Positions 7,295 through 47,220 of a stretch of DNA of 64,000 nt are shown here, piece by piece. Numbering within the stretch: the stretch's first letter is position 1; every line of letters starts with the position of its first letter. The translations under genes were made by a program, and so were the position numbers. The stretch lies in IMG/VR virus record IMGVR_UViG_3300028177_000001, positions 62,001-126,000 of that record, one strand, 5' to 3'. The notes below the pieces were generated by a model, which did not search any database, was not told the DNA's origin, and saw only the letters and a list, made by a program, of their open reading frames with translations.

Positions 7295-8413
7295 TCAGAA
7301 GTGCTTGCTCACGTCCGGAGCCGACTCCCAGAGCTGCTCGAGCTGGTTGACCTCGGAGGAAGCCTCCTTGGTCACCGGGCCGCCGAGCTTCGCCGCGCCG
7401 ACGCTCGCCTTCTTGGGCTGCGGGCGGAGCTTCACGGCTGCTTCCTTGGCGGCGGGGGTCTCCTCGCCGTACAGGGAAGCCAGAACGGCCTGCTCGTCGC
7501 CGTCGAGCTCGGTGGCCAGAACGCCCATGGGGTCGTCCATGTCGCCGTCGAGCGAGACGTCGAAGTCGGGGAGGTCCATGAGGGCCATGGCCTCCTCGCC
7601 ACACGCCTCTTCGTCGCCCATGGCCTCTTCGCCGCAGGCCTCCTCAGCCTCCATGCCCTCTTCCGCGAGCATCTCCTCCTCGGGAGCCTCGTGGTGCATG
7701 CCCTCTTCCATGAGCATCTCCTCGAGCATGGCCTCCTCGTCGTCCATCATGCCCTCTTCCATGAGCATCTCCTCGAGCATGGCCTCTTCGTCCATGAACG
7801 CCTTCTTGGAGGACTCCTCTTCCTCGACGACCTCCTCCTCGACTTCCTCGGAGTCGTCGTCCTTGTCGTCCTCGTCGTCCTCGGCGAGGCGGATCAGGAT
7901 GCGCTCGATGCGGGCGATGCGAGCCTCGTTGGAGGCGATCTTGGCAGTCGCGGCCTTGTTCAGGGAAGCCTTCTTGGACTCCTCTTCCTCCATCTCCTCT
8001 TCCTCAACATCCTCGCCAAGGCGCTTCAGGCTGGCCTTGATGGAAGCGTCGGGGAGGTCCATGAGGGCCATGGCCTGGTCCTCGACTGCGGCGACCTTGG
8101 TCTCGTCACCCTCGGGATCACCCAGCATCGAGATGGCGATGCGGATGCACTGGGCGGCGCGGCGGTCGAGCGCAGCAGCCTTGTAGGCGGGGGAAGCGGG
8201 GCCCTCGTCGGGGGTGGCGGGGTGCTCACCGTTGGTGTAGGGACCGGGGTGAACATCTTCAGCCCAGCTGGAGGTGTCTCCGTTCTTGTAGTCATCCTGA
8301 CCGGGATCCACGCCGTCTCCTGCCGGAGATGCGGGGCCCTCGTCGGGGGTGGCGGGGTGGGCAGAAGCCTTGCGGGCCTCTTCGGCCCAGGTCATGCGCT
8401 GGCGGGTGGACAT
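7295..8413 (-). CDS. Prohead scaffolding/core protein
   Basis: Very acidic with internal repeats (HPATPDEGPASPA x2, DEEAMLEEMLMEEGM x2). Lies between the protease and the decoration/capsid genes. Confidence 0.65.
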   Translation of the reverse strand: MSTRQRMTWAEEARKASAHPATPDEGPASPAGDGVDPGQDDYKNGDTSSWAEDVHPGPYTNGEHPATPDEGPASPAYKAAALDRRAAQCIRIAISMLGDPEGDETKVAAVEDQAMALMDLPDASIKASLKRLGEDVEEEEMEEEESKKASLNKAATAKIASNEARIARIERILIRLAEDDEDDKDDDSEEVEEEVVEEEESSKKAFMDEEAMLEEMLMEEGMMDDEEAMLEEMLMEEGMHHEAPEEEMLAEEGMEAEEACGEEAMGDEEACGEEAMALMDLPDFDVSLDGDMDDPMGVLATELDGDEQAVLASLYGEETPAAKEAAVKLRPQPKKASVGAAKLGGPVTKEASSEVNQLEQLWESAPDVSKHF

Positions 8414-8424
8414 TTCGAACTCCT

Positions 8425-9930
8425 TCAGAGAGGGGGTGTCGGGTTGTTGTAGCCTTCCCAGAGGGAAAGCAGAGTGCCGACCCGGACAACAACCCGGAGT
8501 TCGGCAAGACTAAGATCTCTACCAAGGACCCGAGCGCACTTGCGCACGTAGCTCTGCTCTGAGCTGGAGCCCTTGATTCCGCCGTGTGCAAGCACGGCGC
8601 GGTACACTCGGGGGTCAACACGAACCCCGAACGTCTTGTTGGTGGCGGCGCACCCCTCTACGAGAGCGGCGTCCGAAGAGGCGACTCGCACCAGGTTCTT
8701 CAGGGTGCTGTTGTAGCGAGCCCCTGCCTCCCGGTTCATCTGGCTGCGATGCGCCTGCGAAGAAAGAGTAGGGGCTGGGCGAACCGAGACCCGAGCTTCC
8801 TTGTTGAGAGTGTCGTTGGGACCGTCGGAGGGAGCAATAGCCTTCGCGACTTCCTTCTCTCGCATCTCTTGTTCCAGGCGCTTCCGAACCCGGTCCTTGA
8901 CCCGGTCGTAGACCTCATCCTCGAGATCCTTGAAGGGCGGAGCTGCGGTCTCTGCGGCAGGGGCTTCTCCGCCCTCTTCCTTTTCGTCGTCCCCGCCGAA
9001 CTCAAAGGCGACCCGGCTGCGGGACTGACCCACCACCCCCATAGACGCAGCCTTTGCGATCGCAGAGTCGGACCAGGAAGGGCGGGGAGTGGAGAGGATC
9101 CTGCGGATCTCAGATTCCTGAGCTGCGACATCGCCCGTGCTCAGGATGTTACGCATCACCGCTCCGGTGAAGGCGGGGACCGCGACCCAGCTGGCCTCGA
9201 TGAAGTGCACACCACCCGTCTCGTCGTGGTCCACATGCCCGCAGAGCTCGGCAATAACACGGGTCTGACTGTTGTCGTCAATGAAGGTGTTCAGCTTCGC
9301 CGTCTTGACGTGATCGCAGAGGTCTGTCTCGTCGACGGCGTAGTGGCCGCACTTCGTACAGATTGTGAAGTCGGTGGTGCAGCCCATGGAGAGCGTGCCC
9401 ATCTTCTTCGAGCGGATGTCCGCGATCAGGCCTGTGTGCTTCAGGGAAGTGGCGACCAGGATATCGACGTAGACCGAATCTCCGATATCGCGAGCGACCG
9501 CATCGATGATGCGACCCTTCGACTTCTCCTCTACCTGCACGTGCTCCTGGAAGTTGTGGCCTCCGACGAAGGTCGGGTAGCTGGCCAGAAGCACCTGGCG
9601 AGACCAGGAGTCACCGTTGTTGTTGACGTACTGGGAGCTTTCGGGCTTGATGTGGTAGTCGGTGTAGCGGCGATCCACCGTGGCGGAGCCGACCTTGATC
9701 TTGCCCGGCTCAGCACCCGCGACCTTGTCGACGTCCACTGACGCCACAATGGTGCAATGAGTGAACAGCCACTGGTCCGGGTCCAGGGACCCACCCAGAA
9801 TCTCACGAGCCTGGTCGGAGAGGTTCTGCGTCGAAGCCCCTGAGGCGGCAACCCGACGAACACCGTCCCACCCGCGTCCCGTCACGCGGGGGTGTGTGAC
9901 CATGGCATTGGCTGTCTTGAGGTGTCCCAT
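8425..9930 (-). CDS. Prohead (maturation) protease, HK97/herpes-like serine protease with Cys-rich insert
   Basis: NNNGDSW, NFQEH..GRIIDA, LSMGC..CTKCG..CDH and FIEASWVAVPAF.GA motifs, plus synteny. Confidence 0.8.
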   Translation of the reverse strand: MGHLKTANAMVTHPRVTGRGWDGVRRVAASGASTQNLSDQAREILGGSLDPDQWLFTHCTIVASVDVDKVAGAEPGKIKVGSATVDRRYTDYHIKPESSQYVNNNGDSWSRQVLLASYPTFVGGHNFQEHVQVEEKSKGRIIDAVARDIGDSVYVDILVATSLKHTGLIADIRSKKMGTLSMGCTTDFTICTKCGHYAVDETDLCDHVKTAKLNTFIDDNSQTRVIAELCGHVDHDETGGVHFIEASWVAVPAFTGAVMRNILSTGDVAAQESEIRRILSTPRPSWSDSAIAKAASMGVVGQSRSRVAFEFGGDDEKEEGGEAPAAETAAPPFKDLEDEVYDRVKDRVRKRLEQEMREKEVAKAIAPSDGPNDTLNKEARVSVRPAPTLSSQAHRSQMNREAGARYNSTLKNLVRVASSDAALVEGCAATNKTFGVRVDPRVYRAVLAHGGIKGSSSEQSYVRKCARVLGRDLSLAELRVVVRVGTLLSLWEGYNNPTPPL

Positions 9931-9931
9931 G

Positions 9932-10486
9932 TTAGACCGTCACTTCCACTTCGACCTGGGGGGCTGAGGTGGGGTTGATAACGTCGGTGTCCTTGATCAG
10001 GAACATGCACTGAGGACAGCCCAAGAGCTTGTCGCTGGCCCCGCCACGCCGCTTGTAGATGGCCTTCTTGAGAGGGGGAGCGCCTTCACACCGAGGGCAA
10101 CAGGGACGACCCGAGTCACACTCGGACTTGTCCATCCGGTACTTGCGGTCTCGGGAGGCCCAGTACAACGCCTTGCGAGCGAATGCCTGGGCTACCCGAG
10201 AAGGAACCGGTCCGCCTGGGACGCTGACTGTCTCGGCGCCACCCGCACCCGTGTTGGTGTGGGTGGGGTTCGCCGACCCGTCGTTGTCCATCCTCTGAAG
10301 GTCCTCGACCGGGAAGCGACGGTTGCCCGTCGACATCTCCACATCAACCATGCCGATGGCGGGCCACACTGCTGTGACACGTCCGGCCTGGCTGTCGAAC
10401 ATACCGAACGGAACCACCACTCCCCCTACGGAGAACTCGGCAGCTTTCGCTTGGTAGTCGATGAAGTTGTCTGCTTCCCGCTTCAA
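9932..10486 (-). CDS. Head-associated protein with C-terminal zinc ribbon
   Basis: CPRC...CPQC. Carries the tag variant SRVAQAF. Confidence 0.6.
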   Translation of the reverse strand: MKREADNFIDYQAKAAEFSVGGVVVPFGMFDSQAGRVTAVWPAIGMVDVEMSTGNRRFPVEDLQRMDNDGSANPTHTNTGAGGAETVSVPGGPVPSRVAQAFARKALYWASRDRKYRMDKSECDSGRPCCPRCEGAPPLKKAIYKRRGGASDKLLGCPQCMFLIKDTDVINPTSAPQVEVEVTV

Positions 10487-10494
10487 GAGAGCCC

Positions 10495-11682
10495 CTACTG
10501 GAACAGGTTGAAGTGAACGGATGCCTTCTTGGAAGACTCTTCTTCCTCGACGACCTCTTCGACCTCTTCCTCAGCGGCTTCGCGGGGAAGCTGCGAGGAA
10601 GCGAGCTTGCCGCTCATGATGTCCTTGGCCACGCCCATGAACTCGCCGTGAACCTTCTCGACGGAGCGGCTGGAGCCTGCGACGATGCGGGCTGCGTTCT
10701 GCACCACCTGCACCATCTTGCGCCAGTTCTTCAGAAGGAGGCTCTGGAAGCGAGCGAGGAGATCGGCGAGACCGGCCACCTTCTCGGAAGCGGTGCGCAG
10801 GGCGCGATCTTCGAGCTCGAAGCCCTTGAAGGCGATCGCCATCGTCTTGTTGGTGTCGCGAAGAGCGTCCGTGGTCTCGTTGATGAACTCGGAGACCTCA
10901 GCACCGTACTTCTCGGAGATAGCGTTCATCAGCTCCTTCTGGACCTGCGTGGCGGTGCGCTTGCGCTCAACCACCTTGAGCATCGCCCGAGCCTCCACCA
11001 GAGCGGTCTTGCGCTCGATGGTGATGTTGCCGACCTCGGAGAGCTTGTCCTTGTACTCCTTCTTGATGCCCTCGTGCGCGGCCTTGAGCTCCTTGTCCAG
11101 ACCCGCCTTCGCTTCGAGAAGAGGCGCCACTGCGGCGTCGATCTGAGCCTGAAGCTCCATGGCCTCAGTGTTGAGTGCATCCAGGCGACGGATCTGGTCC
11201 GTGAACTGGTCGTAGCCCTGCACAGTGACGTTGGGCATGGCCGCCGACTTGCTGTCGCTGAAGTAGGTCTCGGCAGCGGTCAGGAGGGAAGCGAACTTGC
11301 CCAGACCTCCGGACTCCTGCAGATCACCCAGCTCGTGGAACTCGGCCTGCTGGAAGTGGTCCGACATGTAGCCCGCCTCGTCCGGCTCGCTCTCAAGCGG
11401 TCCGGTCTCAGGCTCGGCGATCTCGTTCGGGTCGAAGTCTGCCTTCTTGGAAGACTCCTCGACGACTTCCTCTTCCTCGACTTCCTCGGAAGCGGTGACC
11501 GGGAAGTTGAGGACCGCCCGATTCTCGACCGCGTCGGAAATCAGGTCGCTCCGATAGGCGAAGTCGATAGCGATCTTCGGATCGATACCAAGGATGTCGG
11601 CGTTCTGCTGGACTGTGTCGGCGATCTTGTCGATGGCCACGGTCAGTTCGCGAGCACCCCGACGGGTCAGCTTACTGGGCAT
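10495..11682 (-). CDS. Acidic coiled-coil head/core protein
   Basis: Likely start MPSK at 11682 after AGGAG. EEVEEE..SSKKA linkers are shared with the scaffold. Confidence 0.65.
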   Translation of the reverse strand: MPSKLTRRGARELTVAIDKIADTVQQNADILGIDPKIAIDFAYRSDLISDAVENRAVLNFPVTASEEVEEEEVVEESSKKADFDPNEIAEPETGPLESEPDEAGYMSDHFQQAEFHELGDLQESGGLGKFASLLTAAETYFSDSKSAAMPNVTVQGYDQFTDQIRRLDALNTEAMELQAQIDAAVAPLLEAKAGLDKELKAAHEGIKKEYKDKLSEVGNITIERKTALVEARAMLKVVERKRTATQVQKELMNAISEKYGAEVSEFINETTDALRDTNKTMAIAFKGFELEDRALRTASEKVAGLADLLARFQSLLLKNWRKMVQVVQNAARIVAGSSRSVEKVHGEFMGVAKDIMSGKLASSQLPREAAEEEVEEVVEEEESSKKASVHFNLFQ

Positions 11683-11749
11683 TGAAGTACTCCTGAAGAA
11701 GGAAAAGCTTGAGCGGGGCGGCAGGGCCGACACACTATCGGTGTTGTGT

Positions 11750-11839: not shown

Positions 11840-14800
11840 CTACCCCCAGGGGGCAAAGTCCCAGGTCAAAGCAACCTTCTTTGCAGGGCCCTGCGCGTGC
11901 GCGTCAGCTCCCGCCCTGTCATCGAAGTAGTCCACGTCGCCCGCAGGGTTCTTTGCCCCGTACTTGCCCTCGTCCGTCTTCCAGACCGTGCCCGCTGCAT
12001 GCTCTTCCTCAACCACCTCCTTCTCGGAGGGCTGCGGCGCGGGCTTCTTCTCGGCGGGGGGCGGGGCAGAAGTCGGCTTTGCGGGGGTCTTCTTGGAAGG
12101 AGTCTTCTTGATGTGCTTGCCCAGCGCCTGGAGAAGGGTGTCCACCCAGCTCTTCTGTTCCTTCACGTCCTTCGGGAACTCCTTCTGCTTCTTGCCCACC
12201 TGCGCTCGGGTCTTCTTTGCCTCGGCGTCATGCTCACCCACCTTCGCGCCTGGGCCGACCTTGCGGGTTGTCGCGGGGTCAAGGAAGGCAGTGTCCATCA
12301 CCAAGAAGTCGATCATCATCTCCTTCATCATGGCGTGGTCGTCGGCCGACATGTTCTTGTTCTTTTCTGGGTCCGACAGAAGCTCAGCGATGGGGTACGC
12401 CGGGTGGTCGTCCGAAACCAGACCCAGGAACTGCGATCCTGTGAGGTCATCGTAGACATCGCGGATGAAAGCCTGGTCATCCGAACCGAGGCTCTCGTCG
12501 CCCCCCAGGGTGCCGATGCTCAGGATCTTGCGCAAGTTGCCGCCCGCATCCGCAGCGCCGACGAGCCTCGCCATCGAAGAACCCACCCCCTGGGCATCCT
12601 TTCCGTCTTCCAGGGCCCCTGCTACGACCAGACCCCTCTGGATAGCCTCTATCTCGATGCGTCGAGGGTCACCTTCTTTGAGGTCTTCCATCTCGCGAGC
12701 CAGCTTGTCCAGATGGCGGACACGCCCGTCCTGGTCCATCTGGCGGTACTTGGCCACAGCCGTTTCGGCGCGGGCCACCGCTACATCCTGAGCTTTTCGA
12801 AGATCGCCCTCCGTGAGAGGAGCACCAGATTCGGAGAGAGGGTTGTCCGCGTCGACCATCGGGTTGTCGATCACCTTCTCGTAGTGCTCGACCTTAGCCA
12901 GGAACTCGGCCATCTTCTTCGGATTAGCATGAAGCTTCTCCCCGACATCCCCCGTGTCCTCCAGGTCCTCTTGCGCTTGCTTTGCGTCCTTGATGAACTC
13001 CGCCAGGTCTTCCGGCGCTGCGGCGGCCAGGGCCGTGCGCGCTGCGTCCAGGGTTTCCTTGAAGACGGCGTATTGCTCAGGCTTGAGATCATTAATGGCT
13101 CGGGAGACCGTACTCTCGGAGGTCTCGGAAAGCACGTTCACGACGTTGTCGATCAACTCGGTTTTTGCCTTGCTCTCAGCCTTCTCCCTTTTCACCTTGG
13201 CCTTCGCTTCAGCCTCGGCCTTCGCTTCAGCCTCGGCTTCAGCCTTCGCCGCGCCAGCCTTCTCGGCTTCCTCTTCCAGAAGCTCTACGGCTGCCTCAGC
13301 GTCGCTCTTGTCGGAAAGACCCTCGGTGACACCCTTGATTTCGTCCTCAGCCAGGCCCAGAGCCAGATAGCGGTCCATCAAGGACTTCTGGAAGTCCTCA
13401 AACTTCTTCGGGTCTGGGTCGTCGTCGGAGCCGGGCAGGTTGCTGGGGTCTGGCTTCGGAGGAACCTCCGCCTTGCCCCCGTCGTCCTTCGGAGAATCGC
13501 CTTCCGAAGCGTCTCCCTCCTCGAGAGACTCGTACTCACTGCCTCGGTCACGTAGGGTGTCCTCAGTGACCTCAGTGACCTGCCCTGTGTCCTTCTTCCG
13601 AACCCGAACCTTCTTAGTCTCCTCGGCCAGAAACCTCAAGGCGACCCGACGGGCCGAGGAGTCCTTGTAGTTCTGGGACCGGTCCTTCTTGTCCTGCTTC
13701 TCGTCCGGGTCCTGTTCCTCGTCCGTCTCTTTCACCTTGCGGGTCTGGAGGTCAGTACGAGGCGGCTTCTTGGTAGGGGACTGCTTGATGAGGTCCTCGG
13801 TTGCCTCGTCTTCCTTCTCAAGGCGGGTCTTCGTACTGAACAGAGTCCGCAAGGACTCATTGAACATCGGGTCGTTGATTGAGCCCTGGTCTCGCGAAGC
13901 CCAGCGCAAGGCGACCCGAAATGCAGACGCATGCATCTTCTTGCCCTTGTTCCGATCTTCCTGGACCCAGCGCCAGAACTGACCCACAGGCATAGTGAGG
14001 AACTCACCGTCCTTGAAGAAGCCGGGACGGTCGTACTGCTTCTTGTAGAGACCGATCGCCTCCTCGGGTGAGTCGAACCCGAGCATGACCTTGTCCTCGT
14101 CGAACTTTCCAGTCCCAGGGTCCTGCTGGTGGATGACGACGACCACCGAGGAGTCGTGGTTATCCCCCACGTACACGTCCAGCTTGTCCCCGTCAGTGCC
14201 CTCGGTCCCTCGGATCTCGCCGTAGTGGGCGTGCATCTTGATCGACCACTCGGTCCCGTCGGGTGCCTCGCCAGAGCGGGTGGCACCCTTCTTGTTCTCA
14301 ACGTCGATCTGGATGCCCTGGAAGTCAAGGTAGCCCTCGAACGGGAACTCCTTCCGCTTTGCCTGGGGGGGCTCCACCTTCACCGGGTGGTGGTTGTGGG
14401 GGGCCTCAATGATGTCTTGGTTGCTGGCAGCAGTACGTCGCTGCTCCTGGTAGACATAGTCCAGGTATCCCCCGTCGGGGTTAATCTGACGGAGGGTTCG
14501 CCCCTTCCGGATCTCCCCCAGATACCAGGCCCAGACTTCCGGGAACAGCTTGCTGTACGTGATCTTGATGGGGATATCCCGCCCCAAGATCTTCCCCGCC
14601 ATGGCTCGATGGTGACCGTCGGAGAAAGCCACCGTCCCGTCGCGGTGTACCAGAACCCCCACCGGCTCCGAGAAGTCCACGGTTTTCGCCCACTCGCGAG
14701 CTTCCCGAGATCGGGGGTTGAAGCCCCGCCACCACCCTGCCTGGTACTCCCCCACTCCGCTCTTCAGCTCTGACGCCGGGAACATCAGTCGCTGGCTCGC

Positions 14801-17800
14801 GGTCTTCGACCCCCAGCCGCTCTGGGCGAACCAGGCCTTCTGCTTTGCAGCTCGCTCCTCCATGATAGGCAGGCGAGGGTCTTCAGTGGGGATCGGCTGC
14901 CATTCCTCGTCCTTGGACATCCTCTCGCAGGGGAGCCCTTCGCAGGGAGTGTCGTTCCAGTGCTTCGAGAAACCGCCGAGGTTGACCTCGTAGGGACAAT
15001 CACCACACCTGTCGTAGAACTTGGCGCCGTCGTGCAAGATGCCCATGCAGTGAGGGCAGTGGGAGGTGATGTCGAAGGCTGCGGTCTTCACAGAAGCACC
15101 CCGAACCTTCGGGTGTCCGTACAGTGCCTTCTGGACCATGCCCAGACTTGCGAGCTGACGCTGATAGTAGCCGTCGCCCTCCCACTTGATGTCCTTCCCC
15201 TTGAGGACAGCGCGGACTACCTTCTCGTCCGTGATGCGGGGAGCTCCCGCAGACTCAAACATCCGAGCTACCTTATGGGAAGCCTCTCCGTACCAGCCCC
15301 GTTGCTTGATTAGAGCCATGGTCTGCCGCACCACTGCAGACTTCGCAGCGCGGGTGCCGTCCGTGCCCATCAAGGCCAACTTGTTTCCGAACGGGGTGAC
15401 CTTGTACGCAATAAAAGCGTCCGGAGCCTGGTCGGCATCCAGGTCAATCAGCTTGAGGATCTTGTACTTGCTCAGAAAAGTGGCAAGGTCTGGGATGTGG
15501 GTGCCCAACTGCCCGTACGAGATGGAGTAGAGGTCCCAGACGGTCTCTCCCTCAGCCCGTTCAAGATCTGAGGTGGAAACATCAATCCACTTATTCTTAG
15601 GGAACTGGACCCGAGCATATCGCTCAGCCACTCGGTGGGCGGACACAAACCCCTGCTTGTTCAGCTTCTGGGGGGGCTTCCCCTCCTTCAAGAAAGCCTC
15701 CTCCAGGCCGGGAACCAGGTAGCTGGAGCGCAGCATCGAAGGGGCATGACCTACGGCCTCCGCAGCGCCCTCGAGAGCCTCCTTGAACTCTGCTTTGAGG
15801 ATCTTCTCCCGCTCCTTCTTGTCCGAGGGCAGCGTGCCCCCCTTCGAGCGGACTTGCTTCAGCCGGGCCTTCATTTCCTCGTTGGCGTGCAGGCCCCGGA
15901 GGTCCTTCGCTGTGACGCCGAAGTCCTTCAGGTATGCGTTCACGCCCTCTGCCCCGACCACGCAGTCGTCGCCCTCACAAAGGATTTGGTCGTCCGGCTT
16001 CTTGCCCTTGAGGGCTGCCTTCAAGGCTGAGACCACCTTTGCCGAGGAGATCTTCTTCTCCTGGTCGACCCCGGACTTGCCCGTGTACTTGATGGTGGCG
16101 GTGTTCCCGGAGAAGGAGACGTGCTTCTTGAGCCAGCCCGTGACCCCGAAGTGGCCGTCCTTGGCGGATTCGGAGTTGCCTACCCGCTCGTAGGTCTCGT
16201 CAATAAGCGCCACTGCAAGGGCTGTGAGGCGCTCTCTGGGGTCGTCGGAGGTGAGCTCGCGCTTGTACTGAGATCGGAGATCCGGGAGGGCCTGGCGGAT
16301 CTTCTCGACCCGGTTCGCCTTTTCCTTGTCCTGCTTGTCGTGGTGCTGCTCGGTGTACTCGTACACCACCCGCTCGACACCATCAGGGGTCTTCACCTTC
16401 TTCTTGGACTTGAAAGCTGCGGACGCGTTGATGTCCCTCCAACGACCCCCCTCGCTGCGAAACGAGACGATCTCGGGCTCCTTGAAACCTTTGGGGGCGA
16501 GAGTGGACACATCCCAACCGTGCGCCATAGACCATGCGTGGTCGCGGGCCTCCTGGATGTCATCCGCAAAGAACTCGAAGCTCTCCTCTCGGCCTGTGGA
16601 GTCTCTGATCAGCAATTGGTACTTGTTCGATGGGGCGACCCCACCAGGCAACCGAACCCACCGACGGCGGATTCCCGACCCTTGCGGGGTGAATCCGGAG
16701 CGCTTGTACCATGCAGCCAATTGTGCAGAGGACAGGTTCTTAGAACCCACCGCTGCTGGGATCAGGGAAAGCTCTGTGTCCGTACTATCCGCAAGGCGGA
16801 GGATCTCCTTCAGGACAGTGGAACCCGCTCCCCGACCAGAACAATCACGGGGGTCCTCCAGCTGAATCATGACCAGGTGTGCGCGACCCTGCTTGGGCTG
16901 GATCACGGTATGGACTCTACAATCCTGGAACTCCCAGAAACGGTGTCCAGGCTTCTGGGGGTCTTCGGGCTCCGCCGACAGTGCGCGGTAGCCTGTGAAG
17001 AACCTCGAGAGAGAGGCGACCCTAACAGCGGAAGACTGGATAACAAGCTGCTTGCGGAGCTTGCGCACCTGCTGGCCCAGCTGCTGAGAAGGAGCCTTGT
17101 TCTGATACAGGGTCCAGAGCTGCCGAACAACCCCAGGCAGCGGCCTCAGCTTCTCTGTTAGAGTGCCCGTCTTGTCCAGGCCAACCGCCTCCTCGAGGAA
17201 TGCCTCGGCCGTGAGGAGGTGCTTGCGGATGCAGTCTGGACAGAACTTCGCCGGGTGCGCCAGATGGTCCTCGAGCAGCAGGAGCTGCTTCGCTGCCTCC
17301 CTCAGGTTGAAGAGGGGGTCCATGATGGGCAGCTTCGACGCCGCCTTCTTGAAGGGCTTCGTCTCGAACTTCCCGTCTTCGCTGAGCTCGGTGTATTTGA
17401 ACACCTTCAGTACCACCTTGGGCTTGTATCCCGCAGGGAGGTCCGCCTCATAGCCGAGATACTCGGTGTCTCCGGGCAGGATGTAGAACAACACCTCCTT
17501 CGCTGTGGAGTCAAGCACCATCTGGCTCGAGGTGATCATGTTGTCCGTATTTCGGACCATGTTGTTCGGGTCGGCGCGGTCCTTCTTCCGCTTCCCGTAG
17601 AGAGCAGGCGCGATGTCAGCGGGGGACTTGAGACCCCGGAGCGTCTTCTGCGCCTGGTTCCTACGTGTCACCGAGGAAAGGTAGTCGTCTGAATCGTGGG
17701 TGTACCCCGCATTTTCGTGCGCGAACCCGTGGTTGGTCCGAGTGTGGATTTGATCCCCGCGCACTGTCTTGGTCACGCAATCGTGCTTAGACGTGTGCTC

Positions 17801-18232
17801 GATGCTCAGGGTCTTGTCGGGAGATACCAGGAAGGTATGCCCCTTGACACCGCCCTGGTACTCGCACGCAATAGCCAGAGCCTCATCGAGGCTCTTCTGC
17901 TCCAGGACCTTTAGGATCCGAGCTCCGTCCTTCGACTTCTTGCCCACTTCCTTGACGAGACGCTTCTCGGCCTCGTCGCGGGCCACCTGCAAGGCGGAGT
18001 TGACAACGCCGATGCCGAACTCGTTCAGGCCTTCGACCCAGCCCGTCCCCTCATCCTTGAGATACAGAACCTCAACGCCCTCGCGGATCTCGTGGTAGAT
18101 CTTTACCTTGGGGGCGTAGTTCCGGTCGCGGTTCTTCAGCAAACACCGATGGCCTCCCCATTGCCCCGCAGCAATGATGCAGGCAGTTCTGCCCTGCATC
18201 ATCGCCACCACCCTCGCGGGGGAGGGCTTCAC
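11840..18232 (-). CDS. 2130-aa polyvalent protein: Ntn-hydrolase, GNAT, topoisomerase IB, ParB-like, inorganic pyrophosphatase-like and acidic C-terminal domains
   Basis: Ntn: C-IIAAG..KNRDR..EGLNEFG..RTNH. GNAT: GRGAGS..WYKRSGF. Topo IB: RVGN/GKSG/KDLR/GH/SY pentad. ParB/Srx: DGHHR. PPase: YGEIRGTEGTDGDKLDVYVG..FDEDKVMLG. Confidence 0.85.
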   Translation of the reverse strand: MKPSPARVVAMMQGRTACIIAAGQWGGHRCLLKNRDRNYAPKVKIYHEIREGVEVLYLKDEGTGWVEGLNEFGIGVVNSALQVARDEAEKRLVKEVGKKSKDGARILKVLEQKSLDEALAIACEYQGGVKGHTFLVSPDKTLSIEHTSKHDCVTKTVRGDQIHTRTNHGFAHENAGYTHDSDDYLSSVTRRNQAQKTLRGLKSPADIAPALYGKRKKDRADPNNMVRNTDNMITSSQMVLDSTAKEVLFYILPGDTEYLGYEADLPAGYKPKVVLKVFKYTELSEDGKFETKPFKKAASKLPIMDPLFNLREAAKQLLLLEDHLAHPAKFCPDCIRKHLLTAEAFLEEAVGLDKTGTLTEKLRPLPGVVRQLWTLYQNKAPSQQLGQQVRKLRKQLVIQSSAVRVASLSRFFTGYRALSAEPEDPQKPGHRFWEFQDCRVHTVIQPKQGRAHLVMIQLEDPRDCSGRGAGSTVLKEILRLADSTDTELSLIPAAVGSKNLSSAQLAAWYKRSGFTPQGSGIRRRWVRLPGGVAPSNKYQLLIRDSTGREESFEFFADDIQEARDHAWSMAHGWDVSTLAPKGFKEPEIVSFRSEGGRWRDINASAAFKSKKKVKTPDGVERVVYEYTEQHHDKQDKEKANRVEKIRQALPDLRSQYKRELTSDDPRERLTALAVALIDETYERVGNSESAKDGHFGVTGWLKKHVSFSGNTATIKYTGKSGVDQEKKISSAKVVSALKAALKGKKPDDQILCEGDDCVVGAEGVNAYLKDFGVTAKDLRGLHANEEMKARLKQVRSKGGTLPSDKKEREKILKAEFKEALEGAAEAVGHAPSMLRSSYLVPGLEEAFLKEGKPPQKLNKQGFVSAHRVAERYARVQFPKNKWIDVSTSDLERAEGETVWDLYSISYGQLGTHIPDLATFLSKYKILKLIDLDADQAPDAFIAYKVTPFGNKLALMGTDGTRAAKSAVVRQTMALIKQRGWYGEASHKVARMFESAGAPRITDEKVVRAVLKGKDIKWEGDGYYQRQLASLGMVQKALYGHPKVRGASVKTAAFDITSHCPHCMGILHDGAKFYDRCGDCPYEVNLGGFSKHWNDTPCEGLPCERMSKDEEWQPIPTEDPRLPIMEERAAKQKAWFAQSGWGSKTASQRLMFPASELKSGVGEYQAGWWRGFNPRSREAREWAKTVDFSEPVGVLVHRDGTVAFSDGHHRAMAGKILGRDIPIKITYSKLFPEVWAWYLGEIRKGRTLRQINPDGGYLDYVYQEQRRTAASNQDIIEAPHNHHPVKVEPPQAKRKEFPFEGYLDFQGIQIDVENKKGATRSGEAPDGTEWSIKMHAHYGEIRGTEGTDGDKLDVYVGDNHDSSVVVVIHQQDPGTGKFDEDKVMLGFDSPEEAIGLYKKQYDRPGFFKDGEFLTMPVGQFWRWVQEDRNKGKKMHASAFRVALRWASRDQGSINDPMFNESLRTLFSTKTRLEKEDEATEDLIKQSPTKKPPRTDLQTRKVKETDEEQDPDEKQDKKDRSQNYKDSSARRVALRFLAEETKKVRVRKKDTGQVTEVTEDTLRDRGSEYESLEEGDASEGDSPKDDGGKAEVPPKPDPSNLPGSDDDPDPKKFEDFQKSLMDRYLALGLAEDEIKGVTEGLSDKSDAEAAVELLEEEAEKAGAAKAEAEAEAKAEAEAKAKVKREKAESKAKTELIDNVVNVLSETSESTVSRAINDLKPEQYAVFKETLDAARTALAAAAPEDLAEFIKDAKQAQEDLEDTGDVGEKLHANPKKMAEFLAKVEHYEKVIDNPMVDADNPLSESGAPLTEGDLRKAQDVAVARAETAVAKYRQMDQDGRVRHLDKLAREMEDLKEGDPRRIEIEAIQRGLVVAGALEDGKDAQGVGSSMARLVGAADAGGNLRKILSIGTLGGDESLGSDDQAFIRDVYDDLTGSQFLGLVSDDHPAYPIAELLSDPEKNKNMSADDHAMMKEMMIDFLVMDTAFLDPATTRKVGPGAKVGEHDAEAKKTRAQVGKKQKEFPKDVKEQKSWVDTLLQALGKHIKKTPSKKTPAKPTSAPPPAEKKPAPQPSEKEVVEEEHAAGTVWKTDEGKYGAKNPAGDVDYFDDRAGADAHAQGPAKKVALTWDFAPWG

Positions 18233-20988
18233 GGTTGGCCTCGCCTGCGGCGAACTTCAACCACACTGCCGCGCATCTCAAGCAGGCGGGCCACCCGCTG
18301 CACGCTGGCTTCGGGCAGGGGTTCCCTAAGAGACACCCTCTCGCCGAAGGGGATCACGTGCTTCTTGGGAAGCCCCCAGACCTCCATCTCGCCGAACTGC
18401 CAGCTGCCGGTCGGAGCCACCAGCTTCATGTCGGAGTGAGGGTCGTCCAGATACGCAATCGTGGAGTGAGGGTTGTACCGAGGGAACTTGTCGGCGACAT
18501 CGAAGCCCGCTCCCTCAAGCTTTGCCCAGACCTGGTCGCGAACCGCGCTCAGATCCTTCGAAAACCGGACGGTGCTGAACACCACCTTGCCTGTGGGAGT
18601 CACAAACCTGTCCAGTTCCCCCAGGGAGGCTTGCACCGGGGCGTCCAGGTCTACCAGAGCCGTCTCCAGAACCTGAAGAAACTCGTCCTGCCTCGCCTTC
18701 GGAACAGCCCCCACGTACAGGAAAGTGACATGCTGGGGCGAGGTGTCCTCTTCCTTTCTGGGGAACTGGGCGGAGATCTCCTTCGGAACAGGGATGAAGA
18801 GCCCAACACCGCTGCCGTCTCCGGTCTCCGCTGCCATGCGGACTTCTCTGGGGATCGCCGAGTTCTGGGAAGGAAGGTGGAAGTCCTCAGGCGAGCAGAT
18901 CAGCTCGTGCGCAGGCTGGTGGATGGGGAACGTCTGGATCTTGAGAGGACGGCCCAGCGCCTTGGATGTAGCCTTCAGGTCAGACTCGTACGTGGTGATG
19001 TTCTCGTTCTCCCAGATGTCAATCTCACTCACCGTGTTGAGACCGGCCAGAAGGTTGCGCAACACCACGACCTTGAACCGAGCCGCTGACATACCGGGGT
19101 TGAAGTACATCGCGTCAAACCGGAGTCCCTTCTGTCCCAGGAGCTCCTTCACCCGCTTGCTGTGCCTGCGGATGCGCCCCGTGACCACGACGGTGTAGGT
19201 GCTTGCCTCGCGGATCGCTTTCTTGGCTTCCTGCACGGGGGTGGGGATCCAGTAGTTCGACGAGGGCCGATCGGGCACACAAGGCTCGCCAAGGGACTCC
19301 TCCCGCACAAAGAAGGAGAAGGGACCGTCGTCCAGCTCCGAACCCTTCCACCAGGTCGGTGTCTTCTCCCAGGAACGGAACAGCGTTCCGTCAAAGTCGA
19401 ACATCGCGATCTTGGTGTAGCTGCGAGCGATCTTGACTGAGCCCTGGCGGGGCACACCCAGAACCGCCTCGGCGATCGTCGCGCCCCACTTCTGCTTCAG
19501 GCCGTCAGAGTTCATTTCCAGTTCCCTTGAGATCATTTGCTTCAGGCGCGAGGCCTGCTGCGCCAGGTCGGGGTTGTCCAGCAAGAGCTTCTGGCCGATC
19601 TGCCTCACTTGAGCCCCGAGTCTGCCCATGTCCCGAAGCTCGAGGTCGTACTTCCGAGCCAGGTCGGGAACGAAACTCTTGTCCTTGTATGCGTTGCCTG
19701 GGTTCTTGAGCATACCCAGGAACTCCCAGGCGTCATCCCGCTCCATCCCCAGGGTGATCTCGCGAACCCGAACCTGCTCGCTTGAGGGCAAGAACTGGAT
19801 GCTGGCACCCAGAGGAAGACCCACGTCCAGAAGCCCGAACACGAGATCCATGCGCTGGTCGCGAACGTAGTTCTCAAGAGTGGAGCGGAAGCCCTTGTCC
19901 TTTAGGATCAGTTCCCGTACCGGCTCCAGCAGTCCCAGGTCCTCCATCATGGCCAGCGCCTTCTTCCAGGTGCTCTCGGTGAGAACGATCTGGGTGAGAA
20001 GCTGGGCGAGGTGAGACGAGGGGATGTTTTTGAGCTTCGGCGCGTTCTGCTTGATGGCAGCGCGAGTGTCCGGGGTGAGCTTGTGTCCGTACCGGAGGGC
20101 GAACTTGATCACCCGGATCATTCGACTGGGGTCATCCGAGAAGGTCTTGCCTGGGTCCGCCGGGCACTGCATCCGACCCTCGGCCAGGTCCCGGAGTCCG
20201 CACCCCGTCAGATCGAGGATGTCCTTCTTGTCTGGGCCGTTCGCCAGGGCCATCAAGCGGATCAGCAGGGTGTTGTAGGTAAGCTCTCGCCGGTAGACAT
20301 CGTCCTGGATTGTTGACGGCGCCACGCCCGTGGGCTTGTACCCGCCCTCCTCGTAGGACTCGGTCCGGGCGTTTGCAATCTCGATTTCCTCGCCCTCCAT
20401 GTCAAGCCCGTTGAGATCCCAGGGCTCAAGCACCTTCAGAAGAACGACGCCCCACTGGTTGGTCTTCTTGTTCATCCGCGCAGGCACCGCACGAATCAGC
20501 TTGTCCGCGAACCATTCCGAATCATGCCCCAGGTTGACCGCGTCAACGACCGCGTCCACATCCTTGATAGGCCGGTCCAGAACGAAGTCCCGTACAGCAC
20601 CTCCGACCACGTAGACGTGCTTGCCCGCCTTGGGTCCGAGCGTCCGAGCGAACCCCGACAGGAACTTCATCAGCGCGACGGACTTCTTGTGAGCAAGAGA
20701 GGCATGCAGGAACTTCGCGGCCACCCGGCTGTCCGGCTGCGACGCCTGCTTAGGCTCCTCACCGTACTTCTTGCCCACGACCCCGCTCTTCGCCTTCCGC
20801 TCCTTAACGATCTCGCGATCACCCTCCGCCTTCTGCCAGGGTCCGTAGTGCTTACCGCAGAACCACGCACGTCCTCGGCCGTCCGCCCAGATGCACTCGT
20901 GCTCCGGGGAGCTCTTACACCCCTCGTGCATGCACTGGCTGAACGGCGCGTGCCCTCGGGCAACGCGGCTGGCCGAGGGCTGGATCAA
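18229..20988 (-). CDS. tRNA nucleotidyltransferase (CCA/polyA class II) + HAD phosphatase + 2H phosphoesterase fusion
   Basis: NTase: VVGGAVRD..DVD, ARTESY, DDVYRRELTYN, DDPSRMIR. HAD: FDFDGTLF..VVTGR. 2H: HVTF and HSTI. Confidence 0.85.
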   Translation of the reverse strand: MIQPSASRVARGHAPFSQCMHEGCKSSPEHECIWADGRGRAWFCGKHYGPWQKAEGDREIVKERKAKSGVVGKKYGEEPKQASQPDSRVAAKFLHASLAHKKSVALMKFLSGFARTLGPKAGKHVYVVGGAVRDFVLDRPIKDVDAVVDAVNLGHDSEWFADKLIRAVPARMNKKTNQWGVVLLKVLEPWDLNGLDMEGEEIEIANARTESYEEGGYKPTGVAPSTIQDDVYRRELTYNTLLIRLMALANGPDKKDILDLTGCGLRDLAEGRMQCPADPGKTFSDDPSRMIRVIKFALRYGHKLTPDTRAAIKQNAPKLKNIPSSHLAQLLTQIVLTESTWKKALAMMEDLGLLEPVRELILKDKGFRSTLENYVRDQRMDLVFGLLDVGLPLGASIQFLPSSEQVRVREITLGMERDDAWEFLGMLKNPGNAYKDKSFVPDLARKYDLELRDMGRLGAQVRQIGQKLLLDNPDLAQQASRLKQMISRELEMNSDGLKQKWGATIAEAVLGVPRQGSVKIARSYTKIAMFDFDGTLFRSWEKTPTWWKGSELDDGPFSFFVREESLGEPCVPDRPSSNYWIPTPVQEAKKAIREASTYTVVVTGRIRRHSKRVKELLGQKGLRFDAMYFNPGMSAARFKVVVLRNLLAGLNTVSEIDIWENENITTYESDLKATSKALGRPLKIQTFPIHQPAHELICSPEDFHLPSQNSAIPREVRMAAETGDGSGVGLFIPVPKEISAQFPRKEEDTSPQHVTFLYVGAVPKARQDEFLQVLETALVDLDAPVQASLGELDRFVTPTGKVVFSTVRFSKDLSAVRDQVWAKLEGAGFDVADKFPRYNPHSTIAYLDDPHSDMKLVAPTGSWQFGEMEVWGLPKKHVIPFGERVSLREPLPEASVQRVARLLEMRGSVVEVRRRRGQP

Positions 20989-23312: not shown

Positions 23313-24249
23313 GGTTCTTCTCCAGATAGCGGGAGGCTACTCGCTCGGAACTGACAGAAGCCAGCCGATAGCGAGACAGGCCCACATCTGCCTTAGTTGT
23401 AGTCCGGTGCAAGTCCCAGGCCAGGCTCGCCAGCTCGTCCGCTTCCTGCACCAGGGTGTCGAAGAAGCGGGGGCTGTCCTCGAAACTGAAGTCCTGCTCG
23501 GCTTCTTCAGCGTTGATCTTCATGGACCGCACTCGCCCCTGAAGGTTCTGTACTCGGTGCGAGAGGTTGTTCAACGCAGTCTGGGCATCCAGAAGGGATC
23601 GCTGGAGAGGCCGGTGCTTGACGCGGGCTGTCTTTCCCTGTGGGGAATCCTCGTCCAACTCGTCTTCCTGGTCTTCCGCCCAGCCCTCGGGGTCTTCCTT
23701 GATGGCCTCGGCGTCCTCCACGATCTCCTTGACCTCTTCCCTGTCGCGGGAGTCCAGGGTGTCCTCGGCCGGATCCCAGTGAGGCGCATTGAGCTCGTCG
23801 TGAACGGTGTCTCCGATCGCCGACAGGGCCTCGATGCTGTTCATCAACTGGCGTCTCATGTCCGTGATCTTCTGAATGTACCCCTTCCCGCCGAGGTTGC
23901 CGTCCGGGCTCACGTTCCTGCTCTTGATCTTGACGAACCGGGCGTGCGCCGAGGTTGCGTGGCCCAGGGCCATCAAGGTGGAGCGAAGGACCTGCGCAAG
24001 AGGCTTCAGGTGCCGAGCATTGAACAAGAAGTTGTCGTGGATCTCGCGCTCCGAAGGTCCCGGAGTGTTCCAGGCCCACTCGCCTTTGTCGCCGCCCCGG
24101 TCCTTGATGAACCGGACTTCGCCAGCGGTCTTCACCTGGCCTGCATGCTTCTGCCGGGCGAAGCGAACGGCGACACGCTGAGGGTTCGGGGTAGACATGG
24201 GGCAGAGCTCCTCTGGTGTAGACGCACCCATAGGGTCTCTACCGCTCAT
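23305..24249 (-). CDS. Putative head protein with tags at both ends (start may be 24198)
   Basis: RVAVRF near the N-terminus and RVASRY at the C-terminus. Confidence 0.6.
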   Translation of the reverse strand: MSGRDPMGASTPEELCPMSTPNPQRVAVRFARQKHAGQVKTAGEVRFIKDRGGDKGEWAWNTPGPSEREIHDNFLFNARHLKPLAQVLRSTLMALGHATSAHARFVKIKSRNVSPDGNLGGKGYIQKITDMRRQLMNSIEALSAIGDTVHDELNAPHWDPAEDTLDSRDREEVKEIVEDAEAIKEDPEGWAEDQEDELDEDSPQGKTARVKHRPLQRSLLDAQTALNNLSHRVQNLQGRVRSMKINAEEAEQDFSFEDSPRFFDTLVQEADELASLAWDLHRTTTKADVGLSRYRLASVSSERVASRYLEKNHE

Positions 24250-41856: not shown

Positions 41857-41932
41857 AGGGTTCCTCCGTAGAAGAACCCTACCCCGGTCGAACCGCCTTA
41901 GCTACCCGGCTGTAGGCTTTTGTAAGCCGGGG

Positions 41933-47122: not shown

Positions 47123-47220
47123 GAGAGATCCTGTTCTTGCCTGAGCAAGGGGCTCAGTGAGGTACAAGCGCCGAAGATTTGACCACCGGGCACACCGGGG
47201 AATACTCTTGGGCTGGATCT

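What the first reader, a model, noticed from the sequence alone, without database searches (positions are those of the whole stretch)
11840..18232. 2130-aa polyvalent protein carrying an intact topoisomerase IB with at least four other enzymes
Seen, in order with approximate coordinates: Ntn hydrolase (~18180-17360), small CxxC helical domain, GNAT (~16940-16640), topo IB with full R-K-R-H-Y pentad (~16330-15670), unknown domain, Cys-rich module, ParB/Srx-like DGHHR (~14790-14440), PPase-like (~14400-13950), acidic tail. Known: phage and plasmid polyvalent proteins combine such domains and are proposed to be delivered with DNA. Inference: a toolbox for the first minutes of infection (relaxing incoming DNA, acetylating host targets, destroying nucleotide signals). 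It sits immediately upstream of the core/protease operon.
Basis: partly seen in the sequence, partly recalled or inferred. Interest (0 to 1): 0.65.

Follow-up and report, generated by a model that had tools for sequence, protein, structure and literature searches.

The report
Head-operon multi-enzyme protein with topoisomerase IB
A huge uncultured phage encodes, inside its head-assembly operon, one 2130-residue protein that strings together an intact type IB topoisomerase and at least six other enzyme-like modules separated by recurring linker peptides, probably a cargo of enzymes loaded into the capsid and sent into the host with the DNA.

Summary
Window 11840-18232 (-) is one uninterrupted 2130-aa ORF, and near-identical sequence occurs on two other contigs. 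These are a C45-type Ntn hydrolase (invariant Cys18), a four-helix CxxC bundle, a probable GNAT, topoisomerase IB (pentad R683-K719-R779-H829-Y838, invariant in 40/40 relatives), a zinc ribbon, a ParB/Srx-like DGHHR domain and an InPase.

There are two corrections:
- The "unknown domain" (aa 870-1046) is a second, divergent GNAT-fold domain of a large virus-only family without a Pfam model.
- The "acidic tail" is a conserved C-terminal module of about 650 aa. Together with TopoIB it defines a family of 1200-3100-aa proteins on contigs up to 528 kb.

The gene lies between portal and prohead protease/major capsid protein, in a slot kept in related huge phages (the capsid protein is phage-G-like). 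Modules are separated by two recurring peptides, RVAxR[YFW] and K[KT]A[AS], both enriched in this genome.

Best reading: a capsid-loaded, processed polyvalent protein. Packaging, cleavage and delivery are inferred, not shown. I rate it a new variant of a known kind.

The parts
11840..18232 (-). Whole ORF, 2130 aa (P0001), GTG start overlapping the upstream TGA
18182..18232 (-). aa 1-17: putative Ntn propeptide holding a degenerate tag (PSPARVV)
   Evidence: alignment A1; an RVA- or RLA-containing segment precedes the Cys in five of the six homologs that extend far enough upstream
17342..18181 (-). aa 18-297: C45-type Ntn hydrolase module; Cys18 (codon 18179-18181) is the predicted nucleophile; R35, D36, N167 and H168 are invariant
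17339..17350 (-). K-K-A-A (aa 295-298): K[KT]A[AS] motif at the Ntn / helical-bundle boundary
17030..17332 (-). aa 301-401: four-helix bundle with an invariant C-x-D-C-I-x-K-H motif (C331, C334); it moves as an independent module in relatives
16997..17035 (-). aa 400-412: degenerate tag (SSAVRVASLSRFF) after the bundle
16598..16960 (-). aa ~425-545: probable GNAT domain (motif A-like G-R-G-A-G-S at aa 466-471)
16439..16597 (-). aa 546-598: small alpha/beta element of unknown role (pLDDT 75-82)
15638..16435 (-). aa 600-865: topoisomerase IB; catalytic R683 (16184-16186), K719 (16076-16078), R779 (15896-15898), H829 (15746-15748), Y838 (15719-15721)
15617..15634 (-). Tag RVAERY (aa 867-872) after TopoIB
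15095..15625 (-). aa 870-1046: second, divergent GNAT-fold domain; the 411-aa query that contains it drew 585 representative relatives, most of those listed matching this domain; no Pfam model
15077..15088 (-). K-T-A-A (aa 1049-1052): boundary motif
14858..15076 (-). aa 1053-1125: Cys-rich zinc-ribbon-like module (C1059/C1062/C1076/C1079, plus C1097 and C1102)
14795..14806 (-). K-T-A-S (aa 1143-1146): boundary motif
14432..14797 (-). aa 1146-1267: ParB/Srx-like domain; invariant D-G-H-H-R at aa 1205-1209 (14606-14620)
13934..14386 (-). aa 1283-1433: InPase (polyvalent-protein type pyrophosphatase-like) with D-G-D-K-L-D-V at aa 1347-1353
13901..13918 (-). Tag RVALRW (aa 1439-1444) after InPase
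13598..13825 (-). aa 1470-1545: conserved charged block (SPK.KPPR.DL ... DPDEKQDKKDRS.NYKD), ending in tag RVALRF (aa 1529-1534, 13631-13648); present in most family members after the last enzyme domain
11843..13597 (-). aa 1546-2130: acidic spacer, then a conserved domain of unknown fold (~1766-2015), then the C-terminal W-D-F-x-P-W end; always at the C-terminus in the family
18229..20988 (-). Upstream 919-aa gene: PolyA_pol/CCA-type nucleotidyltransferase + HAD_SAK_1 + 2H phosphoesterase, tag at aa 88; fused with the P0001-type protein in relative P0004
8425..9930 (-). Prohead protease candidate (501 aa), two genes downstream; carries a degenerate tag at aa 306

Best explanation
P0001 is a real, single-chain 'polyvalent' cargo protein of a phage-G-like huge phage.

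Architecture (shown):
- Variable enzyme modules at the N-terminus: self-processing C45 Ntn hydrolase, four-helix CxxC bundle, GNAT.
- A topoisomerase IB core with a complete catalytic pentad.
- Further modules: a second GNAT-fold domain, a zinc ribbon, a ParB/Srx-like domain and an InPase.
- A conserved C-terminal module of about 650 aa.

Proposed mechanism (inferred):
1. The protein is made late, together with the head proteins.
2. It is drawn into the prohead through its C-terminal module and/or the short RVAxR[YFW] linker peptides that it shares with about 15-20 other proteins of this phage.
3. It is cut into smaller pieces in two ways. The Ntn module cleaves itself at Ala17|Cys18. The prohead protease cuts at K[KT]A[AS] linkers.
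4. The pieces leave the capsid with the DNA.
5. In the host, TopoIB needs neither ATP nor Mg2+. It relaxes the incoming 300-kb-plus genome for early transcription and replication. The other modules, and the RNA-repair enzymes of the coupled upstream gene, modify host targets or blunt host defences.

Shown here: the domains, the catalytic residues, the conserved head-operon slot, the family, and the enrichment of both motifs. Inferred: packaging, cleavage, ejection and every activity.
For: - Domains and residues.
- Gene order on one strand: TerL (30451-32394), portal (27818-29527), 519, 410, 197, 314, 775, 919, P0001, 412, 184, protease, acidic 372-aa, 224-aa, MCP (5490-6362).
- Two relatives on 265-kb and 411-kb contigs keep the same slot and the same neighbour sizes.
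- The InPase domain matches the C-terminus of a portal protein in a solved structure (9b41, E 3.3e-15) and PHROGs named minor head or virion structural protein.
- About 40 TopoIB-bearing proteins of 1200-3100 aa were found on contigs up to 444 kb (a further relative without TopoIB lies on one of 528 kb); N-terminal enzymes vary and the C-terminal module is fixed.
- The Ntn module is internal in P0004, P0008 and P0013 with an invariant Cys. An Ntn hydrolase needs a free N-terminal nucleophile (established family property), so those proteins must self-cleave there to be active.
- The strict tag R[VIL]A.[RKT][FWY] occurs 17 times in 367 crude gene calls against 1.4 +/- 1.4 in shuffles. The looser RVA..[FWY] occurs 24 times against 3.0 +/- 1.5, and includes the protease. 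Codons vary, so the conservation is at peptide level.
- The tag occurs at module boundaries in the TopoIB family and not in unrelated InPase polyvalent proteins.
- K[KT]A[AS] occurs 19 times against 6.6 +/- 2.3. Eight of the 19 lie in four head-operon proteins (the 372-, 412- and 775-aa proteins and P0001), three of them at P0001 module boundaries. A relative keeps PQPKKAS in its scaffold-like protein.
Against: - There is no proteomic, structural or expression evidence for packaging or cleavage; the phage is uncultured.
- The C-terminal module matches no Pfam family and no atlas cluster, so its anchor role rests only on position and conservation.
- The cultured relative by capsid protein, Bacillus phage G, has no such gene in this slot and no match to P0001.
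- The first GNAT call rests on weak lines of evidence only.
- The Ntn assignment is below NCBIfam's curated cutoff, and the family profile found no solved structure.
- The short motifs were tested on a crude gene call of my own; the cleavage reading of K[KT]A[AS] is by analogy.
- The genome also has a separate stand-alone TopoIB gene, so TopoIB as such need not be virion-borne.
Confidence: 0.55

Rival explanations
1. Packaging-time swivel. The protein is brought to or into the prohead, but TopoIB acts during head filling rather than after ejection. It would relieve twist that builds up while several hundred kb of DNA are pumped in, or while that DNA leaves. The other modules would be passengers.
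For: - The gene is placed between portal and protease.
- TopoIB needs no ATP or Mg2+ (established enzymology), so it could work inside a capsid.
- A second, stand-alone TopoIB could cover replication needs.
Against: - It does not explain why TopoIB is joined to GNAT, ParB-like, InPase, Ntn and RNA-repair modules that vary between relatives.
- Phage G packs about 500 kb without such a gene.
Confidence: 0.15
2. Cytoplasmic polyprotein. The chain is made late only because of where it sits in the operon. It self-processes and its enzymes act in the infected cell (RNA repair, acetylation, nucleotide hydrolysis) without entering the virion. The recurring peptides would be docking or cleavage signals for some other shared partner.
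For: - Tagged proteins are scattered over the genome, not only in the head operon.
- No direct packaging evidence exists.
- In the closest sequenced relative, LR745208.1, the modules are separate small genes.
Against: - The slot inside the head operon is conserved in distant relatives.
- The InPase domain is repeatedly fused to portal or minor head proteins.
- The prohead protease itself carries a degenerate tag, which fits a prohead address.
Confidence: 0.2
3. Artefact: an assembly chimera, a run of fused pseudogenes, or a chance ORF in GC-rich DNA.
For: GC-rich DNA gives many long spurious ORFs.
Against: - GC3 is 0.78 against GC1+2 of 0.52, as in the other real genes.
- Every module has homologs.
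- The same protein is recovered on independent contigs.
- The catalytic residues are intact.
Confidence: 0.02

Closest known systems
Phage polyvalent proteins (Iyer, Burroughs, Anand, de Souza, Aravind 2017, PMC5512222), e.g. P1 DarB/DdrB-type and InPase-bearing proteins
   Same: Many unrelated enzyme domains in one chain; encoded among virion genes; InPase, GNAT and ParB-superfamily domains; proposed processing and delivery with the DNA.
   Different: - TopoIB is mentioned only once in that paper and Ntn not at all, and neither appears among the domain headings my term searches returned.
- No MuF, MPTase, ART or helicase domain is present here.
- The ParB-like domain matches no Pfam ParB model.
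- The constant part is a new C-terminal module plus TopoIB.
- The linkers carry recurring peptides.
Poxvirus (vaccinia) virion topoisomerase IB
   Same: A small type IB enzyme with the R-K-R-H-Y pentad. From my own knowledge, not checked here: it is carried inside the virus core and its loss lowers early transcription.
   Different: The vaccinia enzyme is a free protein of about 314 aa in a eukaryotic virus. Here the domain is embedded in a 2130-aa chain of a tailed phage. The best solved match is bacterial D. radiodurans TopIB, not a poxvirus enzyme.
T4 internal proteins / Alt, with a capsid-targeting sequence and gp21 processing; phiKZ-type inner-body and ejection proteins
   Same: A short peptide address for prohead loading and cleavage by the prohead protease at a simple motif. 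This is established knowledge cited from memory; the SPN3US paper PMC5694885 was listed but not read.
   Different: Those proteases cut after Glu. The candidate motif here is K[KT]A[AS]. The RVAxR[YFW] peptide sits at N-termini, C-termini and internal linkers. Nothing here has been tested.
Encapsulin cargo-loading peptides
   Same: Short conserved peptides on otherwise unrelated enzymes that direct them into an HK97-fold shell (my own knowledge).
   Different: No sequence similarity is claimed. No receptor has been identified. This is an analogy only.
Portal-InPase fusion of Pseudomonas phage (PDB 9b41, 'gp19 Portal')
   Same: The InPase domain of P0001 (aa 1304-1424) aligns to residues 639-754 of that portal chain at E 3.3e-15.
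   Different: There the domain is the C-terminal end of the portal protein itself. Here it is one module among nine.

Membership tests
Type IB topoisomerase (Pfam PF01028 Topoisom_I catalytic core) | Profile match above the curated cutoff | tested here: met
   84.9 bits against a cutoff of 23.7, E 6.9e-24, aa 631-833; phmmer to D. radiodurans TopIB 2f4q, E 2.8e-9
Type IB topoisomerase (Pfam PF01028 Topoisom_I catalytic core) | Catalytic pentad Arg-Lys-Arg-His/Asn-Tyr in order, with His 9 residues before Tyr | tested here: met
   R683, K719, R779, H829 and Y838 align to the motifs of 2f4q and are invariant in 40/40 family members
Type IB topoisomerase (Pfam PF01028 Topoisom_I catalytic core) | N-terminal DNA-binding domain of the bacterial/poxviral enzymes | tested here: inconclusive
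   The alignment to 2f4q starts at its residue 53. Whether aa 546-598, a small alpha/beta element, supplies the rest is open.
Type IB topoisomerase (Pfam PF01028 Topoisom_I catalytic core) | Relaxation of supercoiled DNA without ATP or Mg2+ through a 3'-phosphotyrosyl intermediate | not testable with these tools
   Needs an enzyme assay
Polyvalent proteins (Iyer et al. 2017) | Several unrelated catalytic domains in one polypeptide of a phage or conjugative element | tested here: met
   At least seven enzyme-like modules in a 288-kb virus record
Polyvalent proteins (Iyer et al. 2017) | Gene context of late or virion genes | tested here: met
   Lies between portal and protease/MCP; the slot is conserved
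Polyvalent proteins (Iyer et al. 2017) | Physical packaging into the virion and transfer to the host | not testable with these tools
   Needs virion proteomics or infection experiments
Peptidase C45 / AAT-type Ntn hydrolase | Profile match | tested here: inconclusive
   NCBIfam NF040521 E 1.2e-8 but 34.7 bits against a cutoff of 85. Pfam PF03417 E 0.12. Homolog P0008 carries PF03417. The family profile found no solved structure.
Peptidase C45 / AAT-type Ntn hydrolase | Conserved nucleophile (Cys) at the start of the mature domain, with downstream Arg/Asp and Asn | tested here: met
   C18, R35, D36, N78, N167 and H168 are invariant in 10 homologs
Peptidase C45 / AAT-type Ntn hydrolase | Autoproteolytic activation | not testable with these tools
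   Inferred from internal copies in P0004, P0008 and P0013
GNAT acyltransferases (second domain, aa 870-1046) | GNAT fold | tested here: met
   AF2 model pLDDT 92.6. All top 50 PDB matches are GNATs, E about 1e-4, TM about 0.5. Atlas rows TM 0.54-0.59 to Acetyltransf_1 clusters.
GNAT acyltransferases (second domain, aa 870-1046) | Match to a Pfam GNAT model / canonical acetyl-CoA motif A | tested here: not met
   No Pfam hit in P0001 or in five stand-alone relatives. The loop reads G-T-D-G-x-x-x-A-K instead of R/Q-x-x-G-x-G/A.
GNAT acyltransferases (first domain, aa ~425-545) | GNAT fold and motif A | tested here: inconclusive
   Motif G-R-G-A-G-S. Language-model lead 0.90-0.93. hhalign to a stretch near the N-terminus of P0045, which carries Pfam GNAT hits, prob 59%. 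Low-confidence model whose best PDB matches are mostly GNATs at E 4e-3 to 5e-2. No Pfam hit.
ParB/Srx superfamily | Conserved D-G-x-H-R type loop with the active-site Arg, in a beta-alpha core | tested here: met
   D-G-H-H-R is invariant in 12 sequences. The profile hits the ParB/Srx-fold protein SbnI (6nr6, 5ujd) at E 8e-6 across that loop.
ParB/Srx superfamily | Membership of a described ParB family (ParBc, DdrB-like ParB) | tested here: not met
   No Pfam ParB model matches P0001 or five relatives
InPase (Pfam PF18823) | Profile match above cutoff over the full model, with acidic metal-binding residues | tested here: met
   135.4 bits against a cutoff of 26.8, profile positions 12-135 of 135. 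D-G-D-K-L-D-V at aa 1347-1353.

The most novel reading that the evidence does not exclude
Huge phages of this lineage may run a peptide-addressed cargo system. A short amphipathic tag (S/A-S-x-x-RVAxR[YFW]) on termini and linkers would load a changeable set of enzymes into the prohead. The cargo would be led by a cofactor-independent topoisomerase IB and would include RNA-repair, GNAT, ParB-like and pyrophosphatase modules. K[KT]A[AS] sites and a built-in Ntn self-cleavage would then cut the chains into ejectable pieces. That would be a phage counterpart of both poxvirus core enzymes and encapsulin cargo loading.
Probability: 0.3. Interest if true: 0.8.

Novelty: new variant of a known kind. 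Interest (0 to 1): 0.6.

Why it matters
My searches of the open literature found no report of a type IB topoisomerase in a phage polyvalent or virion protein.

If the enzyme is really carried in the capsid, tailed phages and poxviruses would have arrived at the same solution: bring an energy-free DNA swivel along with a very large genome.

The fixed anchor with exchangeable enzymes, and the linker peptides shared with other proteins of the phage, give a concrete and testable handle on how huge phages choose what to pack into their heads. They would also give a way to load foreign proteins into capsids.

The work also defines a large virus-only GNAT-fold family and a ParB/Srx-like family that have no Pfam model.

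Tried and rejected
- Megablast of the gene against GenBank phages found no match.
- The profile of the Ntn module against PDB sequences gave only noise.
- Pfam scans of the sub-regions aa 296-410, 405-600, 1440-1760 and 1760-2130 found nothing.
- A word search for stand-alone relatives of aa 405-600 found none, and the IMG/VR scan found only the same phage.
- A language-model search of aa 1760-2130 gave no usable hit.
- A first joint alignment of aa 865-1275 misplaced the ParB-like fragments. I discarded it and aligned the modules separately.
- hhalign of the first GNAT region against the second GNAT family showed no relation.
- The neighbouring 775-aa, protease and 184-aa proteins showed no similarity to phage G gp14, gp21 and gp20. 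The 775-aa protein is not the portal; the portal is the 569-aa gene.
- The idea that the tag reflects a DNA-level repeat is rejected, because the codons vary freely.
- Complex prediction was not used, because I had no single likeliest receptor for the tag.
- A position-weight scan for degenerate tags added nothing beyond the three strict copies.

Full report
**1. The object**

- Window 11840-18232 (-) is one open frame of 2130 codons.
- Its third-position GC is 0.78 against 0.52 at positions 1 and 2, the signature of the real genes of this 61% GC genome.
- The GTG start overlaps the TGA of the upstream 919-aa gene (GTGA), with a purine-rich stretch about 7 nt before it. The two genes therefore look translationally coupled.
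- The window is part of a 288-kb IMG/VR virus record, judged 79% complete.
- A 99.8%-identical 2100-aa protein is recorded on other contigs (the longest 9.5 kb). A 44-kb IMG/VR contig is 100% identical over two tested stretches. An assembly chimera is therefore very unlikely.

**2. Modules**

BLASTP against relatives cuts the protein into units that occur independently elsewhere.

- **aa 18-297, C45-type Ntn hydrolase.** NCBIfam C45_proenzyme scores E 1.2e-8 but is below its cutoff, and Pfam AAT is weak. A 55%-identical homolog carries Pfam PF03417. Cys18 and a set of Arg/Asp/Asn/His residues are invariant.
- **aa 301-401, four-helix bundle** with an invariant CxDCIxKH motif. It is confidently modelled. 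Its function is unknown.
- **aa ~425-545, probable GNAT.** The evidence is a G-R-G-A-G-S loop, a language-model lead, hhalign at 59% to a stretch near the N-terminus of P0045 (a relative with Pfam GNAT hits), and mostly GNAT matches to a low-confidence model.
- **aa 600-865, topoisomerase IB.** Pfam gives E 6.9e-24, and D. radiodurans TopIB (2f4q) E 2.8e-9. R683, K719, R779, H829 and Y838 are invariant in 40 of 40 family members.
  - The 411-aa query that contains it drew 585 relatives among cluster representatives. Most of those listed match this domain, and many are stand-alone proteins of about 180 aa.
  - No Pfam model matches it.
  - The AlphaFold model has pLDDT 92.6.
  - All 50 best PDB matches are GNAT acetyltransferases. 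The viral and atlas libraries agree.
  - It is therefore a second, divergent GNAT-fold domain, with an atypical G-T-D-G-x-x-x-A-K loop.
- **aa 1053-1125, zinc-ribbon-like module** with a CxxC...CxxC pattern.
- **aa 1146-1267, ParB/Srx-like domain.** D-G-H-H-R is invariant in 12 sequences, and the family profile hits the ParB/Srx-fold protein SbnI at E 8e-6. No Pfam ParB model matches it.
- **aa 1283-1433, InPase.** Pfam gives E 1.5e-39. It also matches the C-terminal end of a portal protein in PDB 9b41.
- **aa 1470-2130, a conserved module rather than a mere acidic tail.** It consists of a charged block (SPK.KPPR.DL ... DPDEKQDKKDRS.NYKD), an acidic spacer, a conserved domain of about 250 aa of unknown fold, and a W-D-F-x-P-W end. 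It is always C-terminal in relatives.

**3. Context**

- All genes lie on one strand, in this order: large terminase (30451-32394), portal (27818-29527), five unnamed genes, the 919-aa RNA-repair protein, P0001, 412 aa, 184 aa, prohead protease (8425-9930), a 28% acidic 372-aa scaffold-like protein, 224 aa, and the major capsid protein (5490-6362).
- The capsid protein is 84% identical to that of the 485-kb uncultured phage LR745208.1, 49% to Tunturiibacter phage Tunturi_5, and 40% to Bacillus phage G gp27.
- Two relatives on 265-kb and 411-kb contigs keep the same slot and the same neighbour sizes.
  - In one, the RNA-repair domains and the P0001-type protein form a single 2792-aa chain.
  - In the other there are two overlapping genes, as in this window.
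- In LR745208.1 the bundle, TopoIB plus the charged block, and the second GNAT are separate small genes.
- Phage G has no such gene.

**4. The family**

- The word search returned about 40 TopoIB-bearing proteins of 1200-3100 aa on contigs up to 444 kb; a further relative without a recorded TopoIB domain lies on one of 528 kb.
- Their partner domains vary: PolyA_pol/CCA-type nucleotidyltransferase, HAD_SAK_1, RNA ligase, 2H phosphoesterase, PAP2, SAP, superoxide dismutase, phosphoribosyltransferase, NUDIX, ART, GNAT, C45 and InPase.
- RNA-repair domains are the commonest partners.
- TopoIB and the C-terminal charged block are the constant parts.

**5. Linker peptides**

Two short motifs sit at module boundaries.

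*RVAxR[YFW], usually preceded by A/S-S.*
- P0001 has strict copies at aa 867, 1439 and 1529.
- Degenerate copies lie at the N-terminus, near aa 405, near aa 603, and at the C-terminal end.
- The strict form occurs 17 times in my 367 crude gene calls of the genome, against 1.4 +/- 1.4 in residue shuffles.
- RVA..[FWY] occurs 24 times against 3.0 +/- 1.5.
- Carriers include the 919-aa RNA-repair protein, a HAD_SAK_1 phosphatase, a SWIM protein, a 314-aa head-operon protein tagged at both ends, the 184-aa neighbour and the protease.
- It lies at N-termini, C-termini or linkers.
- Its codons vary freely, so selection acts on the peptide.
- It recurs at module boundaries across the TopoIB family and is essentially absent (one probable chance match) from unrelated InPase polyvalent proteins.

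*K[KT]A[AS].*
- It occurs 19 times against 6.6 +/- 2.3 in shuffles.
- Eight of the 19 lie in four head-operon proteins: the 372-, 412- and 775-aa proteins and P0001. Acidic runs ending in SSKKAS occur in the 372-aa and 412-aa proteins.
- Three copies lie exactly at P0001 module boundaries, at aa 295, 1049 and 1143.
- A related phage keeps PQPKKAS in its scaffold-like protein.

**6. Mechanism**

*Shown:* a multi-enzyme chain with an intact TopoIB, in a conserved head-operon slot, with a fixed C-terminal module and recurring linker peptides.

*Inferred:*
- The chain is loaded into the prohead, addressed by the C-terminal module and/or the tag.
- It is then cut. The Ntn module must free its own Cys to be active, and in three relatives that module is internal. 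The prohead protease would cut at K[KT]A[AS] sites.
- The pieces are ejected with the DNA.
- TopoIB needs no ATP or Mg2+ (established enzymology), which suits an enzyme carried in a capsid.
- The parallel with the poxvirus core topoisomerase comes from my own knowledge and was not checked here.

*Rivals:*
- TopoIB acts as a swivel during packaging.
- The protein is a cytoplasmic polyprotein.
- The ORF is an artefact, which the evidence above already contradicts.

**7. Comparison and novelty**

- This is a member of the loose class of phage polyvalent proteins (PMC5512222).
- That paper mentions topoisomerase only once and Ntn hydrolases not at all, and neither appears among the domain headings my term searches returned. 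My literature searches found no phage virion or polyvalent TopoIB.
- New here are:
  - the TopoIB core and the C-terminal module;
  - the Ntn self-cleaving module placed at a fusion/fission point;
  - two unmodelled domain families;
  - the two linker peptides.
- I rate it a new variant of a known kind, with interest 0.6.

**8. Limits**

- There is no expression, proteomic or read-level evidence.
- The motif statistics rest on my own crude gene calls.
- The first GNAT domain and the Ntn fold are not structurally confirmed.
- The fold of the C-terminal module is unknown.
- Only table 11 was used throughout.

Noticed in passing
Genome-wide. In the window: 20725-20742, 23341-23358 and 24160-24177 (314-aa protein, both ends), 34797-34814, 37882-37899, 55645-55662. 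Outside the window: L005-L012.: The peptide tag R[VIL]A.[RKT][FWY], typically A/S-S-x-x-RVAARY, sits on termini or linkers of about 15-20 otherwise unrelated proteins of this phage. It occurs 17 times against 1.4 expected, and its codons are not conserved. Carriers include a HAD_SAK_1 phosphatase, a SWIM-finger protein and a metallophosphoesterase.
   Followed up: partly
window 7295-8413 (-) and 10495-11733 (-): The very acidic 372-aa and 412-aa head-operon proteins carry repeated 'EEEE-SSKKA-S/F/D' units. The 412-aa protein ends in ...EEEESSKKASVHFNLFQ. These look like maturation-cleavage sites of scaffold-like proteins. A related phage keeps PQPKKAS (L004:16928-18109).
   Followed up: partly
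L002:1324-2772 (-), = G000:C1 about 201943-203391, outside the window: A second, stand-alone topoisomerase IB gene lies in the same genome. It is 482 aa with Pfam Topoisom_I E 7.7e-8, and is about 22-27% identical to the P0001 domain. Four of the catalytic motifs are visible in a gapped alignment; the second Arg was not placed.
   Followed up: partly
window 18229-20988 (-): A 919-aa 'Swiss-army-knife' RNA-repair protein (PolyA_pol/CCA-type nucleotidyltransferase + HAD_SAK_1 + 2H phosphoesterase) sits in the head operon. It is translationally coupled to P0001 and is fused to it in relative P0004 (2792 aa).
   Followed up: partly
window 9932-10486 (-): The 184-aa protein conserved next to the protease in all three phages compared has a tag-like PSRVAQAF...YWASRD stretch and two CxxC pairs (a zinc ribbon). 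No family match was found.
   Followed up: no
window 41807-47182 (+) and 41933-47167 (-): Two ORFs of about 1750-1790 aa lie on opposite strands over the same DNA. GC3 (0.82 against 0.60) favours the minus-strand one as the real gene. The local GC is the highest in the window (0.65).
   Followed up: no
L003 (LR745208.1 396402-414106); W02:C1:14685-15179: In the closest sequenced relative (capsid protein 84% identical) the four-helix bundle, TopoIB plus the charged block, and the second GNAT-fold domain are separate genes of 143, 528 and 244 aa. This is a natural split of the modules that are fused in this window.
   Followed up: partly
P0062-P0208 (relatives of aa 865-1052 and 1139-1267): Two domain families have no Pfam model. 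One is a virus-only GNAT-fold family, which makes up most of the 585 representative hits of the aa 865-1275 query and is often a stand-alone protein of about 180 aa. The other is a small ParB/Srx-like family with an invariant DGHHR.
   Followed up: partly
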